From IMG/VR virus record IMGVR_UViG_3300028558_000016, positions 186,001 through 250,000 of that record: DNA of 64,000 bases. One strand, written 5' to 3'. The notes beneath the pieces were generated by a model that was given only the letters and a program-made list of their open reading frames with translations, was not told where the DNA came from and did not search any database. This document shows positions 2,979 through 53,318 of the stretch, one piece after another (positions within the stretch are counted from its first letter, which is position 1; every line of letters starts with the position of its first letter). A program made the position numbers and the translations under genes.

Positions 2979-5900
2979 ATGCTTTTAAATCTATTACAGC
3001 TATTACAGTCAGACGACCAAACGACGTACACCGACAAGGTAAACTATAACTTCGATCAGATCTTAGCTATGGGTGGTGGTCCAATTGGTCCAACCGGTTT
3101 CCAAGGAATACAAGGTGTTCCAGGTGCACAAGGAATCCAGGGATTCCAAGGTCTTCCAGGAATGGACGGATCGAGATGGTATGTGTTGCCTTCAACAAGC
3201 ACACCAACAACACCAACTCCAAAAATTGGAGATCTTTGGTTGCAAACGGACACTTTAGCAATTTTAGAATATCTTGGTTCTCCTCCAATGTGGGTCAACC
3301 TTGGTTTCACTTTAGCATCAACTGGAGTTTTCACTGCAGGCGGAGCAAACAACTTGGTTTTCACAAGCCCAAGCCCATTGCGTTCTCTTGTTTTATCTCC
3401 AATAAATTATGGAATTGGAAATGATTCTCCTGGAGCTGCCGATTACAGATTAAAGATCGTGACTTCTTCAGGAAGCCCAATGATAAGATTTGCTGTTGAT
3501 GATGCTGGATCAGAAAGCACACCAACAACAACACAACCTACAATAAGCGTTCAAAAAATAAACAACGTTCTTTATCCTGGTTCTACAAACTGGAGATTAA
3601 ACGTTGAAGACTTAAACGGTGACATCTTCTTGAATCTTAATGGAAACTATTTTGGAGTATATCCACAAATAGCAAGCGTATCAAGATTCGATTTCGGTGC
3701 ACAAACGAGATTACAAAATAATGCAGTTGACAGATTGTTGTCATTCGCTGTGTCAAACACAGGAACAGAGTTCTTCCACATAGGAAGACACACTGGTTTA
3801 GCAACAACTGCAGACAGATTATTCTCTATAAAAGATAATGGACAGATTTCTATTGGTGATGCATTCAGCAATCCAATTGGAGCAACAAATTATCACATTG
3901 ATTCCATCAATGATGACCTTGCGAAAACAGGTCCGCCACCTCCAGTAGATTGGTTGAGATTAAGAGGAAGAGTTCAAAATGGTGGAACTACTTGGGATTC
4001 ATTAAACATCAACCACAACAGGTTGTTCAGTGACACAGGATCTCCTGCACAAAGATCTACGATGATAAGAATTCAACATCAGGTCAACAGCTCGTTGTAT
4101 CACTTTGTTGGATTTACTGGTGGTGCCGATAATACTTCCGCATCATTCAGACCTCAATTGAGATTGGGTTTTACAAACTCTTATTATTTTGCTGCTGACG
4201 TAAACGGAAGAATTGGAATTGGTTCTACTTCATTCATACAAAAATACAACAGTGGTGCGAATACATTTCAACCTAAGTTAACTATCGAAGGTTCTGGAGC
4301 AACTGTCACAACAGGAAATTCAGCATGGAGCGGTATTCACTTAATACATCCAAACGTCGTTGATGCACAGGTTGGTATCACATCTGGTGGTCTTGGAGTA
4401 AATGAGAACTTAACATTTGCTGGAATTCACTTCAAGGATAAATCAAGTCAAATCATTCAAGGTGTTGACATTGAATTTGCCACAGCAAGATATTTCGATG
4501 CTGGTGAAATCACAAGACACACTATAACAAGAGAAGGAAATCACTATTGGTATTCAAAAAACGATCCAAACACATTCTTGTTGTTAGAGCCAGGCGGATT
4601 AGCAACTCCAAATGATTTCATGCACATCAGTGCTTACAATCAAACAACATTAAGCTGGAAGGATATTATATTTAACAGAGGAACTGATTTCACCGGATAT
4701 GGCGACGGATTTGTTGGTATTGGTGGAGACATTGGATTCGGAGATCAAGTAGCAGCTTCAGTCAACCTTGCAAACAATCCAGCACAAACTTATGTTGCAT
4801 TAACTGTTTGTACATTTACTGTTTATCCATTCTTTGGATTCCCATTCTCTGGATTCATAAATGCAGGAGACATTTTCACGTCATCTTCTTTCCCAGACGT
4901 AATGAACTTAGATTCAGGAACTGTTGCGAGAGCAAAACCTCAATCCAAGCTTCACGTAAATGAATCAGTAACTTTCGGAACAAGACTTGATGGTCTTTAC
5001 AGTTTCGTTGGAACTAATTCGTTCACGGTTGGTAATACACATCGTGCGAGCGGATTAAGAAGCATTATATTAGGTGGTGTTGGTCATACAGCATCAGGAC
5101 AAGATGGAATAATTATTGGTTGGAGTGGTGGAGCTGGTATCACAATGCCGGATCCAAATAAAGTATTGTTGGCAACAACAACTCACGTTAGCACAGTTGC
5201 TCCATCTACACTTGTTTCAAGCCCATTATACACAGACGGTGAACAAAATACATTCTTTGGTGTTCCAGCACAATACGTTGTTACTGGAGCTCCTATATTA
5301 AATCCGTCAATTTCAATTCCTACATCTGGATTTGGAATAAGCGGACAAATTGGAAGATACGGAAGCGTATTAACTTTAGAAGGAAGAACCGATACGGCTC
5401 AATTGGCAAATGTAGCAGTTGCGATGGAATTCCACATAAAGAACGTTTCTAACACTAAGAGAATATTAGCATCAATTAATGCACAATACACCGAAGTTAC
5501 TCCTGGAACTCCAATAGGATTCCTATCGTTTGCTGTTCTAAAAGGACCAGCGATAAACAGTGCTGGTGTTGGTGCTTCTGGTGCTTTGGCTGAAGCATTA
5601 AGATTAACAGCAAATGGAACTTTACAATTTATTCCAACAGATCCTTCGATGAAATCGAAGTTGACAGTTGCACAAAATCAAAAAACTGGTGGCCCAGGAT
5701 ATTCATTATTCTTGACCGGTGGTTTTGCAAACACGACTGGTGGACCTGCTGCAGGTGGAAACTTATTCATTGACGCAGGACTTGGTGGTGCAGGTGGTGC
5801 AAACGGTGGTGTTGCAATTGGTGTAAACTTTTCAACTGCTAATATTACTGTAGGAACCACCTCGGTTTCAACAACAGCAATCGTTGGAGCCACTGCTTCA

Positions 5901-6434
5901 TTAGCATCAACTACAGCTTCAGTTGTAACACAAAGTGCTGATGTGTCTGTTACAGGAAACATGAGACATGTAAGACCAACTTGGGAAAGCTTCTCAGTAA
6001 GCAGCTTTGTTAACGGTTCTGGTGGAGCAACTCTTACCATAATAGCAGATAACGTTAAAGTCCATCATGGTGGTGGAACAAACACAAACGCAGTAACATT
6101 ATTTTCGTTCATCATAGATCCAGCACCTTTCGATCGTATGATTTATTGGTTAGGTGGAAATGATGCTTCGATCGCACAATCTGCTGGAGCATTTAATGCT
6201 GTAGAACAAAACAAGGGACAAATATTCATGCACCTTTATAGATTTCCTTATGGTGGTGGTGACATCATCCAAAGAACTTATACAACGATGTATGGTGGTG
6301 GTAACTTTATTGTACCAGCTAATCAATCAATGAAAGTTTTAATGGAGACTGGACCTATTGAAGGTGTAAGAAGTTTCTTTAGAACTGCAACTGGGCACGA
6401 TTTCTTATTCAGACAAGCTAAATTTGGATTATAA
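2979..6434 (+). CDS. Collagen-repeat tail fibre / virion protein (1151 aa)
   Basis: Ten Gly-X-Y triplets near the N-terminus (GPIGPTGFQGIQGVPGAQGIQGFQGLPGMDG); long G/T/S/A-rich beta-type body. Confidence 0.7.
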   Translation: MLLNLLQLLQSDDQTTYTDKVNYNFDQILAMGGGPIGPTGFQGIQGVPGAQGIQGFQGLPGMDGSRWYVLPSTSTPTTPTPKIGDLWLQTDTLAILEYLGSPPMWVNLGFTLASTGVFTAGGANNLVFTSPSPLRSLVLSPINYGIGNDSPGAADYRLKIVTSSGSPMIRFAVDDAGSESTPTTTQPTISVQKINNVLYPGSTNWRLNVEDLNGDIFLNLNGNYFGVYPQIASVSRFDFGAQTRLQNNAVDRLLSFAVSNTGTEFFHIGRHTGLATTADRLFSIKDNGQISIGDAFSNPIGATNYHIDSINDDLAKTGPPPPVDWLRLRGRVQNGGTTWDSLNINHNRLFSDTGSPAQRSTMIRIQHQVNSSLYHFVGFTGGADNTSASFRPQLRLGFTNSYYFAADVNGRIGIGSTSFIQKYNSGANTFQPKLTIEGSGATVTTGNSAWSGIHLIHPNVVDAQVGITSGGLGVNENLTFAGIHFKDKSSQIIQGVDIEFATARYFDAGEITRHTITREGNHYWYSKNDPNTFLLLEPGGLATPNDFMHISAYNQTTLSWKDIIFNRGTDFTGYGDGFVGIGGDIGFGDQVAASVNLANNPAQTYVALTVCTFTVYPFFGFPFSGFINAGDIFTSSSFPDVMNLDSGTVARAKPQSKLHVNESVTFGTRLDGLYSFVGTNSFTVGNTHRASGLRSIILGGVGHTASGQDGIIIGWSGGAGITMPDPNKVLLATTTHVSTVAPSTLVSSPLYTDGEQNTFFGVPAQYVVTGAPILNPSISIPTSGFGISGQIGRYGSVLTLEGRTDTAQLANVAVAMEFHIKNVSNTKRILASINAQYTEVTPGTPIGFLSFAVLKGPAINSAGVGASGALAEALRLTANGTLQFIPTDPSMKSKLTVAQNQKTGGPGYSLFLTGGFANTTGGPAAGGNLFIDAGLGGAGGANGGVAIGVNFSTANITVGTTSVSTTAIVGATASLASTTASVVTQSADVSVTGNMRHVRPTWESFSVSSFVNGSGGATLTIIADNVKVHHGGGTNTNAVTLFSFIIDPAPFDRMIYWLGGNDASIAQSAGAFNAVEQNKGQIFMHLYRFPYGGGDIIQRTYTTMYGGGNFIVPANQSMKVLMETGPIEGVRSFFRTATGHDFLFRQAKFGL
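3078..3170 (+). repeat. Collagen Gly-X-Y repeat
   Basis: Ten consecutive GXY triplets in the translation. Confidence 0.9.
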
Positions 6435-6781: not shown

Positions 6782-7114
6782 ATGAGAAGAAGAATGTCGG
6801 ACATGATGAACAAATTTTCTTTCGCACAGATGACGTCAAACAGTGACGGAAAAACAAGCGGAAGCGGAACAGTGGGAATTATAGTAGCTCTCGCTGGAGT
6901 AGTTGGTTTCATATATGGCGTAGTAGAATATGCATGCCTTTCAAAAGATGGAACTATAATGAGCCAAAGCATAATCGTCATCACTATTGGTGCTGGTCTT
7001 CTTGGATTCAGAAAATCTAAAGATGGAAATCTTGCAGCAGTGTTAAACACCGCAGACAACGATACAACTACAATAACAACCACAGAGGTTAAAGCCGATG
7101 ATGTTGTTAAATAA
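6782..7114 (+). CDS. Small two-TM membrane protein, holin-like
   Basis: Two hydrophobic segments (GTVGIIVALAGVVGFIYGVV; SIIVITIGAGLLGF) followed by RKSK and a charged tail. Confidence 0.45.
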   Translation: MRRRMSDMMNKFSFAQMTSNSDGKTSGSGTVGIIVALAGVVGFIYGVVEYACLSKDGTIMSQSIIVITIGAGLLGFRKSKDGNLAAVLNTADNDTTTITTTEVKADDVVK

Positions 7115-7119
7115 TTTCT

Positions 7120-7128
7120 AATATATAG
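7120..7128 (+). promoter_or_regulatory. Putative late promoter AATATATAG
   Basis: Recurring motif, 3 nt before ATG 7132. Confidence 0.5.
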
Positions 7129-7131
7129 AAC

Positions 7132-8166
7132 ATGAGATTTTTATTTCTTCTTATTGCTTTCGTTTTTTCATCACTTAAGGCACAAACTTTCCGTGATGAT
7201 GGCTCTTTGTTATCAATCGAACAACCTAACGCAAACAAGGTAGAAAGTATTTTAGCAGGATGTCCAGCAACAAATAATTTATTTACTTTTTACGCGCAAA
7301 ACAATGCACAAAGAGGAGTAATGTTTGATCTTCAAGCAATTAATGCAGTAACAATATTATGCTTTGACGTTAATTTAGATCCAGGAACTACCAATGTAGA
7401 AATATATTCAAAGGCAGGAACTCATGTTGGATTTCAAAATCTTGCAGGTTCTTGGACACTAATTGGAACAGCTGTAAATTTAGTTTCAGCTGGAGTAAAT
7501 GTTGGTACGTATGTTCCAATTGCAGTAAACACTCCTATCGGTGCTGGCGCAACAAGAGCATTTTATATCACACGTACAACATTGAATGGACCTGTTGTGG
7601 ATTACACGAACGGTGTTCTCGTAGGTAATTTATTAGCTGCGGATGCTAACCTTAAAATATTTGAAGGAACCGGTAAGGAATATCCATTCTCTACAAACTT
7701 CTCTCCGCGTCAGTTTAACGGAAGAATATATTACAATCTTGGAGTTCTTCCAATAGAGATGACATTGTTCAATGTGTCTTTTGAAAATGAGACCAATGTA
7801 TTAAGATGGGAATGTGCAACAGAATTAAACAATGAATTTTTCTCTGTAGAGAAATCTTCTGATGCAGTTAATTTCAATTCAATTGGAAAGATTAATGGAG
7901 CAGGAACTTCATTGTATACCACAAGATATTCTTTTGTGGATAAGAACGTTTCTTCTGTAAACTATTACAGAATAAAACAAGTAGATTTTAACGGTAATTA
8001 CAAGAACTCTGACATGGTCGTTATCGATAACAACAGAACAATATCAAAGAATGTTATTAAGACATTTGATCCTACAGGAAGAGAAATTTCAGATGTTTCT
8101 AATTTCCAAGGAATTTATATCATACAATATGATAACGGCACATACGAAAGAAAAATCAAACAGTAA
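7132..8166 (+). CDS. Secreted protein with signal peptide, Ig-like pre-CTD domain and T9SS type A-like C-terminal sorting domain
   Basis: Signal peptide MRFLFLLIAFVFSSLKAQ; LPIEMTLF...LRWECATELNNEFFSVEKS...YYRIKQVDFNG block; C-terminus KTFDPTGRE...GIYIIQYDNGTYERKI. Confidence 0.75.
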   Translation: MRFLFLLIAFVFSSLKAQTFRDDGSLLSIEQPNANKVESILAGCPATNNLFTFYAQNNAQRGVMFDLQAINAVTILCFDVNLDPGTTNVEIYSKAGTHVGFQNLAGSWTLIGTAVNLVSAGVNVGTYVPIAVNTPIGAGATRAFYITRTTLNGPVVDYTNGVLVGNLLAADANLKIFEGTGKEYPFSTNFSPRQFNGRIYYNLGVLPIEMTLFNVSFENETNVLRWECATELNNEFFSVEKSSDAVNFNSIGKINGAGTSLYTTRYSFVDKNVSSVNYYRIKQVDFNGNYKNSDMVVIDNNRTISKNVIKTFDPTGREISDVSNFQGIYIIQYDNGTYERKIKQ

Positions 8167-8483: not shown

Positions 8484-8780
8484 ATGAAAAAGTTTCTTCT
8501 CATATTATTTCTCATAGCATCCTTGATTGGTGTTGCTCAAACTGGTGGAAGACATCGAGAGGGTAAAAATCAAAAGAGGCTTCACCACCGCATAACAAAG
8601 AAATGGAAATACAGATCAACTCCTGGTTGGAAAAATAAGGACAAGAGTCTGTTTCATTGGAATGTGACCAAGGGTAAAAGGTCGAGAAATAAAATGCAAT
8701 TAAGAATAAACACTGAAAGAGCCAGAAGAAGGATACATGGCAATGATGTGTTCGCTAAAAGAAAATACAAGAGAGTTTAA
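8484..8780 (+). CDS. Highly basic small protein with signal-peptide-like N-terminus
   Basis: MKKFLLILFLIASLIGVAQ followed by K/R/H-rich sequence. Confidence 0.6.
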   Translation: MKKFLLILFLIASLIGVAQTGGRHREGKNQKRLHHRITKKWKYRSTPGWKNKDKSLFHWNVTKGKRSRNKMQLRINTERARRRIHGNDVFAKRKYKRV

Positions 8781-9660: not shown

Positions 9661-10247
9661 ACTTTAATTTTTTTTATTTCCACGTCAACGAAATCAACAC
9701 CAGGGAAAACATCCTTAACGTATTTTTCTATTTCTTCTTTCTTGTTATTATTAAATACCGTAATAGCTAAAAATTGTTTGTCATCATTATTCCAGTAAGC
9801 ATATACATTTTCGATTTCAGGATCATTGTGAAATTTAGCTTCAATTGATTTTGCAACTGTTTTATAAATTTCTGTTGGTTCCTTCTCCCAGCATGAAACA
9901 CAAAAATGTATTTCATTATCTCCCATCAATTTCAATTGCTCAGCAGTCCATTCCATATTACACTGAGCGCAATATTCATAAAATCCCCAAAGAACAATTT
10001 TTTCTATTCCAAACTCTCTTATTTGTTCCATCTTTCCATCAACAGCTTTCAACAAATCATCTATGTCTCCGTCGCAATCTAATAAATAGTGTACTTTTCC
10101 TGGCTGAGCTTTTGACTCAAGCATCTTACACGAAACATATTTACCGATGGTCAGTTCTATATTCTTTCTTATATCTTCAGCAGCCATTGCATTTCCAGCA
10201 TCCTGCATGTTTAATTGGTCAGAATCGAAATTTAAGTGATATTCCAT
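9657..10247 (-). CDS. Hypothetical protein (196 aa)
   Basis: ORF, TAATG-coupled to the upstream nucleotidyltransferase. Confidence 0.7.
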   Translation of the reverse strand: MEYHLNFDSDQLNMQDAGNAMAAEDIRKNIELTIGKYVSCKMLESKAQPGKVHYLLDCDGDIDDLLKAVDGKMEQIREFGIEKIVLWGFYEYCAQCNMEWTAEQLKLMGDNEIHFCVSCWEKEPTEIYKTVAKSIEAKFHNDPEIENVYAYWNNDDKQFLAITVFNNNKKEEIEKYVKDVFPGVDFVDVEIKKIKV

Positions 10248-11296
10248 TATGTGCTTTGTTTTTGAAGTTCAAATACTGTTTTTATATACTGTTTAATCAA
10301 CTCAGGATCTGTCTCTAATATGTAATCGTCAAATGAACCGTCATCGTGAATCTTAAATTTATTCATGAATGCTCCAAGCTCTTGGCCTTTCAATCCAGTG
10401 ATCTCCATTACAATCTCGCCATTGTATTTTTCTTTTATCCTGTTTTCTCTTTCCATTTCAATGTGAAACTTATTCACTTCGCCTCTCACATTAGACCCGA
10501 AAAATTCATCAATAGTTCCTACTAACCTATTCGGAAAATATTCGTCAACAATCTTATCAAAGAAAGAAGTTTGATTTGCCTTCGGCTTTGTCTCTTCCAA
10601 CCAATCCAAGAAACGAGAGAATGTTTTTCTTTTCCTGTCTCTCTTTTCATTTATGGCAGACAATTCATCAAATAAAGCTGGATTGAAATACTTTCCAGTT
10701 GCAACCCATTCAAATATGTCTTCAAGCGTCGTGAATCCCTTGTTCCATTTCTCCGGATTCAAACCAAGAAATTCTAATATCTTAGTTTGATCTTTTGTAA
10801 CAAGAATCTCCTTACGTATTCCTCTTTCATCCCTCAACGGATAAATCAATCCTTGGTGTCCGTACTTTAAACCAAACTTATGAAAGAATCTTCCGAGAAT
10901 ATTTCCAACGTCATTGAAAGAATAATATGCTATTGACGTTTCGTAATCGGCAACGGTACAGATTAGGTCAATCTGAAAATTGTCATACAAGAAGCTAAAG
11001 CAATTATGATTGGTTGAATAGTTTGGATCTTTCTTCATTTCCTTAATTGGAGTGAACCCAAAGTGCTGTATCACAGCATCTCTAACAACATCTGTGTTGG
11101 CTTTAACCAAGACGTCAAGATCTCCGAAATCTTCCTTGGCCGAGTAATATGGAACTGGTGTGAATTTTATCTTCTCATCTGGTAATAGGCCTTCCACTTT
11201 GGAAAGTATTATTTCCAATTCAGGGACGAACTTCTTCATAAGTTCATCAAATTGTTCCTTGGGCATTCTTGTTGCCCCCAATAGAGATCCTCCCAT
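10247..11296 (-). CDS. Pol-beta superfamily nucleotidyltransferase (349 aa)
   Basis: FGDLDVL (DxD) and QIDLI third Asp; C-terminal GLKGQELGAFM resembles CCA-adding enzyme tails. Confidence 0.65.
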   Translation of the reverse strand: MGGSLLGATRMPKEQFDELMKKFVPELEIILSKVEGLLPDEKIKFTPVPYYSAKEDFGDLDVLVKANTDVVRDAVIQHFGFTPIKEMKKDPNYSTNHNCFSFLYDNFQIDLICTVADYETSIAYYSFNDVGNILGRFFHKFGLKYGHQGLIYPLRDERGIRKEILVTKDQTKILEFLGLNPEKWNKGFTTLEDIFEWVATGKYFNPALFDELSAINEKRDRKRKTFSRFLDWLEETKPKANQTSFFDKIVDEYFPNRLVGTIDEFFGSNVRGEVNKFHIEMERENRIKEKYNGEIVMEITGLKGQELGAFMNKFKIHDDGSFDDYILETDPELIKQYIKTVFELQKQST

Positions 11297-15037: not shown

Positions 15038-15585
15038 TGATTATAAATAGCAGGTCATCCAATTTTTTATTCACGTTTCCAAAGGGATTCTTTTCTAAGG
15101 CTGTCATTGACAAGTACACGCCTTATGTAAAGAGAAATCCTTTGCCGTACGATAATTTAGAAAATTTCATGGCAGCCCAAATACAAAGCGTAACGTTTCC
15201 TACTTTAAGCATGGAACCTGTTAGACAGACAAGGCTTTATGGCAAGTCACAGGAATACAAGAACTCAACTCCAATTGCAGATTTATTTACGAGAGACATC
15301 CAGGTTACGTTTAAGTCATTGGACGGTTACATCAATTATTGGATATTCATGGAAAATGCCTTGGAGTATCTCAGCTTTGAGAACAAGACCCTTTATTTCG
15401 ACGATTTACAGATGAGGTTCTTGGACCAAGAAGGCCACGTCATCACGACAACTCAGTATAAAGGAACTTATTTCAAATCATTGTCAGAGGTGACCCTTTC
15501 TTATTCAGACAACAACCCTGACTTTAAGACATTTACTGCGACATTTGGGTTCTTTAAGATGGACATATTCGTTGACCACGATTAA
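15037..15585 (+). CDS. T4 gp3/gp19-fold tail tube or tail completion protein
   Basis: QIQSVTFPTLS...DIQVTFKSLDGYINYW...FKSLSEVTLSY pattern typical of tail-tube-fold proteins. Confidence 0.55.
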   Translation: MIINSRSSNFLFTFPKGFFSKAVIDKYTPYVKRNPLPYDNLENFMAAQIQSVTFPTLSMEPVRQTRLYGKSQEYKNSTPIADLFTRDIQVTFKSLDGYINYWIFMENALEYLSFENKTLYFDDLQMRFLDQEGHVITTTQYKGTYFKSLSEVTLSYSDNNPDFKTFTATFGFFKMDIFVDHD

Positions 15586-15592
15586 TATATAG
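15584..15592 (+). promoter_or_regulatory. Putative late promoter AATATATAG heading the CTS-leader cluster
   Basis: Recurring motif upstream of ATG 15612. Confidence 0.5.
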
Positions 15593-20084: not shown

Positions 20085-20093
20085 GATATATAG
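20085..20093 (+). promoter_or_regulatory. Putative late promoter GATATATAG
   Basis: Recurring motif, 3 nt before ATG 20097. Confidence 0.5.
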
Positions 20094-53309: not shown

Positions 53310-53318
53310 AATATATAG
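53310..53318 (+). promoter_or_regulatory. Putative late promoter AATATATAG
   Basis: Recurring motif upstream of the holin-PAS gene. Confidence 0.5.

What the first reader, a model, noticed from the sequence alone, without database searches (positions are those of the whole stretch)
7132..8166. Phage gene encoding an apparent Type IX secretion system cargo protein
Seen: a Sec signal peptide, a central domain, an LPIEMTLF...YYRIKQVD block and a short C-terminal sorting-like domain (TFDPTGRE...GIYIIQYDNGTYERKI), with a late-type motif 3 nt upstream. Established: this pre-CTD/CTD layout is typical of Bacteroidota T9SS substrates, which are exported and anchored on the cell surface. Inference: the phage uses the host T9SS to display or release a protein late in infection, for receptor masking, exclusion of competing phage or as a decoy.
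Basis: partly seen in the sequence, partly recalled or inferred. Interest (0 to 1): 0.72.

Follow-up and report, generated by a model that had tools for sequence, protein, structure and literature searches.

The report
Phage secreted protein with short T9SS tail
A 482-kb rhizosphere phage carries a host-derived gene for a lectin-like surface protein whose export tag is the recently described three-strand "short" form of the Bacteroidota type IX secretion signal, so it is a real but not unprecedented case of a phage borrowing its host's secretion system.

Summary
It has a Bacteroidota-style Sec signal peptide (cleavage predicted after A17, Gln at +1), a lectin-like jelly-roll (about 44-203), an Fn3/Ig-like domain (206-299) and a 37-aa C-terminal tail. 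However, 24 of 35 same-architecture relatives carry a bona fide type A CTD. All seven closest motif-bearing cellular orthologues (Bacteroidota MAGs) have full-length CTDs. The phage tail aligns to these with two internal deletions, keeping motifs B, D and E and the terminal lysines. This matches the "short CTD" class shown experimentally in Prevotella intermedia in 2025: a 3-stranded sheet equivalent to strands 3, 6 and 7. The same tail sits on unrelated signal-peptide proteins in 6 of 401 cellular genomes. A PorV complex model passes its controls (0.77 vs 0.01), with the interface confined to the tail. Phage-encoded T9SS cargo was already reported in 2020. The upstream ATATATA motif is real and recurrent, but it is not demonstrably "late". 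The protein's role in infection is untested. Verdict: new member of a known kind, of moderate interest.

The parts
7121..7128 (+). ATATATAG start-proximal motif, 3 nt before the ATG. It is a candidate promoter or initiation element giving a leaderless or very short-leader mRNA (inferred).
   Evidence: 9 of 43 TATATAG sites genome-wide are followed by N3-ATG. ATATATA is the top enriched upstream heptamer, with its 3' end peaking at -4.
7132..8166 (+). Complete ORF, 344 aa plus stop (P0001).
7132..7182 (+). Sec/SPI-type signal peptide, residues 1-17. Predicted cleavage is LKA|Q, with Gln18 at +1 (the Bacteroidetes Q-rule).
   Evidence: Sequence; helix 2-13 in AF2; homologues carry the same ...A|Q pattern; Q-rule in PMC5837995.
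7183..7260 (+). Low-confidence linker, residues 18-43. It contains a DDGS motif shared with the closest cellular orthologues.
   Evidence: pLDDT <50 at residues 30-42; alignment.
7261..7740 (+). N-terminal jelly-roll, lectin-like beta-sandwich, residues 44-203. It has no Pfam model and often occurs as tandem copies in giant surface proteins.
   Evidence: (44% identity, rmsd 1.7 A to a DUF4082-named AFDB cluster).
7747..8028 (+). Fn3/Ig-like 'LPxEL...YYRLKQVD' domain, residues 206-299. In this family it is the usual domain preceding the CTD.
8029..8052 (+). Inter-domain linker, residues 300-307. By analogy this is where PorU-type cleavage would be expected (inferred, not shown).
   Evidence: pLDDT dips to 73 in block 301-310; analogy to PMC11969387.
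8053..8163 (+). Short type A CTD, residues 308-344, forming three beta-strands (308-312, 327-333, 338-343). Motif B is FDPTGREI, motif D is GIYII, motif E is ERKIKQ with K341 and K343. Motif A and motif C are missing.

Best explanation
The gene encodes a T9SS cargo protein that the phage acquired from a Bacteroidota host lineage and that now carries a 'short' type A C-terminal domain.

Proposed mechanism:
(1) The pre-protein crosses the inner membrane through Sec. Signal peptidase I cuts after Ala17, exposing Gln18. This step is inferred from the sequence and the Q-rule.
(2) In the periplasm the protein folds into a lectin-like jelly-roll, an Fn3-like domain and a 3-stranded C-terminal sheet. 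This step is predicted.
(3) The sheet presents motifs B, D and E and the terminal lysines to PorV and the SprA/Sov translocon, in the way shown for short CTDs of Prevotella intermedia. The protein is then carried across the outer membrane. This step is inferred, supported by homology and a complex model.
(4) The passenger is then released or attached to the cell surface. There its lectin-like domain most likely binds a glycan, which would change the surface or adhesion properties of the infected cell. This step is inference only; neither the ligand nor the benefit to the phage is known.
For: - Genome setting: the gene lies in a 482,156-bp IMG/VR virus record.
- Family: 24 of 35 same-architecture relatives hit TIGR04183, best E 1.4e-12.
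- Orthologues: the seven closest cellular orthologues that carry the YYR motif (Bacteroidota MAGs, 37-56% identity) all have tails of 109-112 aa, against 67 aa here.
- Alignment: the phage tail is the long CTD minus two internal segments.
- Profile comparison: hhalign of short tails against bona fide CTDs gives probability 79%, E 1.6e-5, in register with a 17-aa gap. The CTD profile itself hits solved T9SS CTDs such as 8glk_D at 1.6e-13.
- Fold: AF2 gives three strands for the tail at pLDDT 87-94.
- Precedent: Ye et al. 2025 describe exactly this class. Their short CTDs are 40-55 aa with collapsed spacing before motif B and between B and D, form one 3-stranded sheet equivalent to strands 3, 6 and 7, and were shown by experiment to be cleaved and glycosylated (PMC11969387).
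- Motifs: D and E with the lysines are the parts reported as required or sufficient for secretion (PMC4804311; PMC10202324).
- Portability: the same tail sits at the extreme C-terminus of unrelated passengers in 6 of 401 cellular Bacteroidota genomes. Four of four assessable passengers have a signal peptide followed by Gln. They lie in chromosomal neighbourhoods next to canonical Por_Secre_tail genes.
- PorV model: PorV from the MAG holding the closest orthologue was folded with residues 205-344. The score was 0.77 against a best control of 0.01. In the tool's calibration that mark was reached by 51 of 78 solved complexes and 2 of 108 mismatched pairs. The interface on the phage protein covers only residues 312-344.
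- Same phage: it also encodes a canonical T9SS cargo, a 634-aa protein with a signal peptide plus Gln and a CTD scoring 36.9 bits.
Against: - The tail does not reach the curated TIGR04183 cutoff (14.4 vs 23 bits), and the whole protein hits nothing. Five other short tails give no TIGR04183 hit at all.
- In Flavobacterium johnsoniae the translocon pocket recognises the size and shape of a 7-stranded sandwich (PMC10994853). A 3-strand tail might therefore not work in every host.
- Short CTDs have been validated in one species only.
- The host is unknown.
- The PorV model may pass from memory of solved CTD-PorV complexes, so it shows likeness and not binding.
- No expression, secretion or virion data exist; no RNA run was listed.
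Confidence: 0.7

Rival explanations
1. The tail is a decayed remnant of a long CTD that no longer works. On this view the protein is exported by Sec only and acts in the periplasm, or is simply released at lysis.
For: HMM scores are sub-threshold. Four of the seven strands are lost. The F. johnsoniae translocon recognises the shape of the whole domain (PMC10994853).
Against: The same trimmed architecture, with conserved motif B, D and E positions and a shared [DN]-G-[STN] turn, recurs in 11 tails on unrelated passengers. That pattern points to selection and not decay. Short CTDs are functional in P. intermedia. The PorV model also passes its controls.
Confidence: 0.12
2. The short tail binds PorV or the translocon but is handled poorly, so the protein acts as a phage-made competitor. 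It would slow export of host adhesins that serve as phage receptors, which would give superinfection exclusion.
For: PorV binding is predicted. Within this protein family, the short-tailed copies recovered are on phage or phage-like contigs while the closest cellular orthologues are long-tailed. This reading is inference only.
Against: The same tail occurs on ordinary chromosomal genes beside other T9SS cargo, where a jamming signal would be harmful. P. intermedia secretes 48 predicted short-CTD cargo normally. The phage also encodes a long-CTD cargo that needs a working T9SS.
Confidence: 0.07
3. It is a virion decoration or fibre-associated protein, with lectin-like and Ig-like domains as in capsid or tail decorations. 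On this view the hydrophobic N-terminus is not a working signal peptide.
For: It lies about 700 nt downstream of a 1151-aa ORF with collagen-like repeats. Ig-like and lectin-like modules are common on virions (established knowledge). One gene that follows the same upstream motif hits a virion structural protein family.
Against: The signal peptide is textbook and conserved across cellular orthologues, with Gln at +1. Relatives in other phages sit among metabolic genes, ORFans or next to terminase, not in a consistent structural module. There is no PHROG structural hit. The whole family is cellular secreted cargo.
Confidence: 0.05

Closest known systems
Short T9SS C-terminal domains of Prevotella intermedia (Ye et al. 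2025, Open Biol 15:240335, PMC11969387)
   Same: Both are 3-stranded sheets corresponding to strands 3, 6 and 7 of long CTDs. Motifs B, D and E and a basic residue in motif E are retained. The spacing before motif B and between motifs B and D is collapsed. Both sit at the extreme C-terminus of signal-peptide proteins that often carry Fn3 or LRR passengers, and both are predicted to dock on PorV like long CTDs.
   Different: This tail is found in a rhizosphere phage, in other phages, and in 6 of 401 non-selected Bacteroidota genomes. [quoted passage not shown] This sub-type carries a [DN]-G-[STN] turn between the last two strands, and most members lack the GxY of motif D. Whether it shares a lineage with the P. 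intermedia tails was not tested. There are no experimental data here.
Phage-encoded T9SS type A cargo in 'Cryophage' (Bellas et al. 2020, Nat Commun 11:4403, PMC7468147)
   Same: A phage of a Bacteroidota host encodes secreted passenger proteins that carry T9SS sorting domains, and it presumably hijacks the host system.
   Different: [quoted passage not shown] Here the passenger is a lectin-like jelly-roll plus an Fn3-like domain, the CTD is the short form, and the contigs recovered from four rhizosphere metagenomes were identical.
Canonical T9SS type A CTD (TIGR04183 / PF18962; RgpB CTD, PMC4804311; F. johnsoniae CTD-PorV-SprA complexes, PMC10994853)
   Same: The tail is homologous by profile-profile comparison and colinear alignment with orthologues. 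It shares the C-terminal position, motifs B, D and E, and the near-terminal lysine.
   Different: It lacks motif A (strands 1-2) and motif C (strand 5). It has three strands where the canonical domain has a seven-strand sandwich, and it scores below the curated HMM cutoffs.

Membership tests
T9SS type A CTD (TIGR04183 / PF18962) | HMM score above the curated cutoff | tested here: not met
   The whole protein gives no hit even at E<=10. The tail alone scores 14.4 bits, E 0.029, against a cutoff of 23. PF18962 gives no hit.
T9SS type A CTD (TIGR04183 / PF18962) | Seven-stranded Ig-like beta-sandwich | tested here: not met
   AF2 places only three strands after residue 305: 308-312, 327-333 and 338-343. 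The fold definition is from PMC4804311 and PMC10994853.
T9SS type A CTD (TIGR04183 / PF18962) | N-terminal Sec signal peptide plus domain at the extreme C-terminus | tested here: met
   The signal peptide is residues 1-17 with Ala at -1 and Gln at +1. The tail ends 1-3 residues before the stop. This was judged by inspection; no dedicated predictor was available.
T9SS type A CTD (TIGR04183 / PF18962) | Homology to bona fide CTDs: motifs B, D and E and the conserved C-terminal Lys | tested here: met
   hhalign gives probability 79%, E 1.6e-5. The tail is colinear with long-CTD orthologues. K341 and K343 align with the K-x-I-K motif.
Short T9SS CTD class (PMC11969387) | Single 3-stranded sheet equivalent to strands 3, 6 and 7 of long CTDs, with motifs B, D and E kept | tested here: met
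   the class definition is.
Short T9SS CTD class (PMC11969387) | Collapsed spacing before motif B and between motifs B and D; 40-55 aa from cleavage site to C-terminus | tested here: inconclusive
   The distance from the motif B Gly to the motif D Gly is 11 residues, against 27 in orthologue P0006. The tail is about 37-45 aa. The cleavage site is unknown, and motif boundaries are not defined identically to the paper.
Short T9SS CTD class (PMC11969387) | Predicted to dock on PorV through the tail | tested here: met
   ipSAE 0.77 against a best control of 0.01. In calibration the mark was reached by 51 of 78 solved complexes and 2 of 108 mismatched pairs. The interface covers residues 312-344 only. 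The pass may reflect memory of solved complexes.
Short T9SS CTD class (PMC11969387) | T9SS-dependent export, PorU cleavage and C-terminal glycosylation | not testable with these tools
   Needs expression in wild type against T9SS mutants, plus mass spectrometry.
Phage-encoded T9SS cargo (PMC7468147) | Encoded in a phage genome whose host has a T9SS | tested here: inconclusive
   The phage genome is shown: a 482-kb virus record with completeness given as 100. The host is unknown. Genomes with the closest orthologues carry PorV and at least 111 type A CTD matches each. The phage also has one canonical CTD gene.
Virion decoration / fibre protein | Similarity to known virion protein families and no export signal | tested here: not met
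   The only PHROG hit is of unknown function at E 0.026. A signal peptide is present.

The most novel reading that the evidence does not exclude
The short CTD may be a mobile sorting module that phages favour and swap between captured host surface-protein genes. Three phylogenetically separate phage-borne lineages of this family carry it, while their cellular sisters carry long CTDs. Its use may differ from normal cargo export. For example, it could give fast or PorU-independent release, or titrate PorV to strip receptor adhesins from the infected cell.
Probability: 0.12. Interest if true: 0.7.

Novelty: new member of a known kind. Interest (0 to 1): 0.4.

Why it matters
The finding extends two recent observations. 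Phage-encoded T9SS cargo was previously reported as a unique occurrence in one phage. Short three-strand CTDs were previously seen in one oral species. Here both apply to a huge rhizosphere phage, and short CTDs also appear in other phages and in scattered environmental Bacteroidota.

In practice, curated CTD models (TIGR04183, PF18962) miss these tails. T9SS secretomes and phage 'moron' inventories are therefore under-counted.

In biology, natural three-strand tails on many passengers support the view that motifs B, D and E are the core of the T9SS signal. They also give a compact natural tag for secretion engineering. What the lectin-like passenger does for the phage remains open.

Tried and rejected
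**Searches that could not run or found nothing**
- Megablast of 7 kb against GenBank phages found no match.
- The search for related loci with the 33-sequence alignment was too diverse to run. With a 4-sequence alignment it found no viral contig.
It was rerun without them.
- The PorV Swiss-Prot reference I named is not held. I used PorV from the MAG that holds the closest orthologue.
- Foldseek against the PDB gave only generic jelly-roll/Ig matches in glycoside hydrolases, with TM <0.3.
- No RNA run was listed, so expression and timing are untested.
- Contigs from four rhizosphere DNA runs were identical, so no natural variants could be used to gauge selection.

**Hypotheses considered and dropped**
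- That the short tail is a recurrent tag within this phage: an HMM scan of all 3,179 open frames found only the target.
- That the short tail is phage-specific: it also occurs in chromosomal contexts in 6 of 401 cellular genomes. The intermediate-tail protein P0069 is also cellular.
- That the short tail is an undescribed class: short CTDs were published in 2025.
- That the upstream motif is a late promoter: the genes that follow it have mixed functions.

Full report
**What is there.** The window is bases 186001-250000 of a 482,156-bp IMG/VR virus record with 36.8% GC. The same sequence occurs in several rhizosphere DNA metagenomes. The N-terminus MRFLFLLIAFVFSSLKA|QTF has the layout of a Sec/SPI signal peptide with Gln at +1. 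That is the Bacteroidetes Q-rule (PMC5837995), which has already been noted for proteins of Porphyromonas phages (PMC10367356). An AF2 model built on a 33-sequence alignment is confident, with mean pLDDT 86.9. It shows a signal helix at residues 2-13 and a poorly ordered linker. These are followed by a jelly-roll (44-203), an Fn3/Ig-like domain (206-299), a short linker and three final strands (308-312, 327-333, 338-343).

Scanned whole, the protein hits nothing in Pfam or NCBIfam, even at E<=10. Scanned alone, the last 75 or 50 residues give TIGR04183 at 14.4 or 14.2 bits (E 0.03). The register is correct but the score is below the 23-bit cutoff. PF18962 does not hit. Formally the test fails.

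**Homologues change the picture.** An exhaustive HMMER search found 64,678 relatives. Both passenger domains are very widespread and often occur in tandem in giant proteins. Among 35 proteins sharing the full architecture, 24 hit TIGR04183, best E 1.4e-12. The tail length after the conserved YYR motif falls into two groups: 95-112 aa in most, and 63-67 aa in the query and a few others. The closest cellular orthologues are in Bacteroidota MAGs. The seven that carry the YYR motif (37-56% identity) all have 109-112-aa tails. The genomes holding five of the closest carry PorV and at least 111 type A CTD matches each.

In the alignment the phage tail is colinear with these long CTDs but lacks two segments. 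One is the YPNP-containing first strands. The other is about 17 residues between 'D..G..V' and 'G.Y'. By the strand map of de Diego et al. (PMC4804311), it therefore keeps motif B (strand 3), motif D (strand 6) and motif E (strand 7, with K341 and K343). It has lost motif A and motif C. A profile of six short tails matches a profile of 18 bona fide CTDs at probability 79%, E 1.6e-5, with that same internal gap. The CTD profile in turn finds solved T9SS CTDs such as 8glk_D at 1.6e-13.

**A portable tag.** I first suspected a phage-specific invention. The other short-tailed family members lie next to terminase and RecT genes. Others lie in contigs of ORFans with Thg1, a sigma factor, PRPP synthase or MazG-like genes, or in 630-640-kb mega-phages. 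That idea did not survive testing. A short-tail profile run over 401 cellular Bacteroidota genomes found full-length matches in six, one per genome. Each sits at the very C-terminus of an unrelated passenger. The passengers include a 105-aa thrombospondin-type-3-like protein, a leucine-rich-repeat protein and a CBM-like protein. All four that could be assessed begin with a signal peptide followed by Gln. Their neighbourhoods are ordinary chromosome (acetyl-CoA carboxylase, NadA, iPGM, SusD-like), and four neighbours carry canonical Por_Secre_tail domains. A short C-terminal module shared by unrelated signal-peptide proteins is the expected behaviour of a sorting signal.

**The literature settles what it is.**
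- Ye et al. 2025 (PMC11969387) divide the 80 predicted T9SS cargo of Prevotella intermedia into 32 long and 48 short CTDs.
- The short ones are 40-55 aa. They have collapsed spacing before motif B and between motifs B and D, and are predicted as one 3-stranded sheet whose strands equal strands 3, 6 and 7 of long CTDs.
- They dock on PorV in the same way as long CTDs. [quoted passage not shown]
- The phage tail fits this description feature for feature.
- Earlier work showed that the last 22 residues of HBP35 (motifs D and E) can export GFP, and that the motif E lysines are needed (PMC4804311; PMC10202324).
- Against easy generalisation, the F. johnsoniae translocon structures show recognition of the size and shape of a whole 7-strand domain (PMC10994853).

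**PorV model.** I used the one complex job on PorV from the MAG with the closest orthologue, folded with residues 205-344. The score was 0.77 in all three runs (0.76-0.77) against a best control of 0.01. In the tool's calibration that mark was reached by 51 of 78 solved complexes and 2 of 108 mismatched pairs. The confident interface on the phage protein is residues 312-344 only. Because CTD-PorV complexes have been solved, this shows likeness and does not prove binding.

**Phage context.** The same phage encodes a canonical cargo outside the window, at G000:C1:171565-173469 (-). It is 634 aa, with a signal peptide plus Gln, SprB-like repeats and a CTD scoring 36.9 bits. Three related mega-phages each carry one or two TIGR04183 ORFs above the cutoff. 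Phage-encoded T9SS cargo was first reported for 'Cryophage' in 2020 (PMC7468147). The general idea is therefore not new.

**The passenger.** The N-terminal domain has no Pfam model. In fold and embedding space it lies among lectin-like, DUF4082 and MAM-type jelly-rolls. A glycan-binding or adhesive role is the natural inference but is untested. Relatives in other phages sit in no consistent module, so the gene behaves like an accessory 'moron'.

**The upstream motif.** ATATATAG ends 3 nt before the ATG. Genome-wide, 9 of 43 TATATAG sites are followed by N3-ATG. ATATATA is the most enriched heptamer upstream of 694 predicted ORFs, and its 3' end peaks at -4. The spacing leaves no room for a leader, which suggests leaderless or near-leaderless transcripts (inference). 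The 23 genes scanned that follow the motif include NUDIX hydrolases, glycosyltransferases, an RNA ligase and a 2OG oxygenase. They also include a virion structural protein and weak portal and tape-measure hits. 'Late-type' is therefore not supported. No RNA run was listed that could date expression.

**An unexplained pattern.** On a tree of the passenger domains only, the short-tailed proteins fall in three places, and the query nests among long-tailed cellular proteins. An AU test rejects a single clade (delta lnL 151, p 3e-30). Yet the short tails share a turn motif between the last two strands. The strict form [YF]-x-[DN]-G-[ST] is present in 6 of 6 short tails and 0 of 31 long or intermediate ones. 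The looser [DN]-G-[STN] is present in all 11 short tails once the cellular ones are added. Either the tail moves as a module, or the same deletions recur. The sample is small and partly biased by how it was found.

**Verdict.** It is a new member of known kinds: short-CTD T9SS cargo, and phage-encoded T9SS cargo. It has incremental value in showing short CTDs beyond Prevotella and in phages, and in showing that curated models miss them.

Noticed in passing
L005 (G000:C1:171565-173469, minus strand; about 14.5 kb upstream of the window): A second secreted protein of the phage, 634 aa. It has the signal peptide MKKQIAIIAICLMSIMNSTA|Q, a propeller-like N-terminal region, three SprB-like CxGGxxG repeats and a canonical T9SS type A CTD (36.9 bits, above the cutoff).
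   Followed up: partly
window 8484-8780 (+): A 98-aa ORF with a Sec-type signal peptide (MKKFLLILFLIASLIGVA|Q) followed by an extremely Lys/Arg-rich body. It has no family hit. It may be another exported phage protein.
   Followed up: no
window 6782-7114 (+): A 110-aa ORF with two hydrophobic helices that ends 18 nt before the target gene. It looks like a small membrane protein of unknown role and has no family hit.
   Followed up: no
window 2979-6434 (+): A 1151-aa ORF with an N-terminal collagen-like G-X-Y run, which looks like a tail fibre. It has no Pfam or PHROG hit. The preceding 856-aa ORF (3-2573) hits only phrog_31887, of unknown function.
   Followed up: no
whole genome G000; in the window at 2579-2586, 7121-7128, 15585-15592, 20086-20093 and 53311-53318: A start-proximal ATATATA(G) motif whose 3' end peaks 4 nt before ATG codons. 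It is the most enriched upstream heptamer in the genome. The genes that follow it have mixed functions. The spacing suggests leaderless mRNAs.
   Followed up: partly
L002, L003, L004 (mega-phage records LR756504.1, LR756502.1, LR745206.1): These 630-640-kb uncultured phages each encode one or two ORFs with TIGR04183 above the cutoff. They also carry relatives of the Fn3-like domain, one with a long-type CTD (sub-cutoff, 19.9 bits) and two with short CTDs.
   Followed up: partly
L101 9978-10292 (-) (G112:C4, cellular Bacteroidota genome): A minimal 105-aa cellular protein made only of a signal peptide, an Asp-rich thrombospondin-type-3-like repeat and a short CTD. It would make a compact natural test case for the short signal.
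   Followed up: no
tree of P0001 relatives: Short-CTD proteins of this family are polyphyletic by their passenger domains, yet they share a tail-specific [DN]-G-[STN] turn. This suggests either module exchange or recurrent deletion.
   Followed up: partly
window 10247-11296 (-): A 349-aa ORF that matches phrog_24943 ('DNA polymerase') at E 3.4e-35 over its first 251 residues. It is transcribed opposite to the structural-looking block.
   Followed up: no
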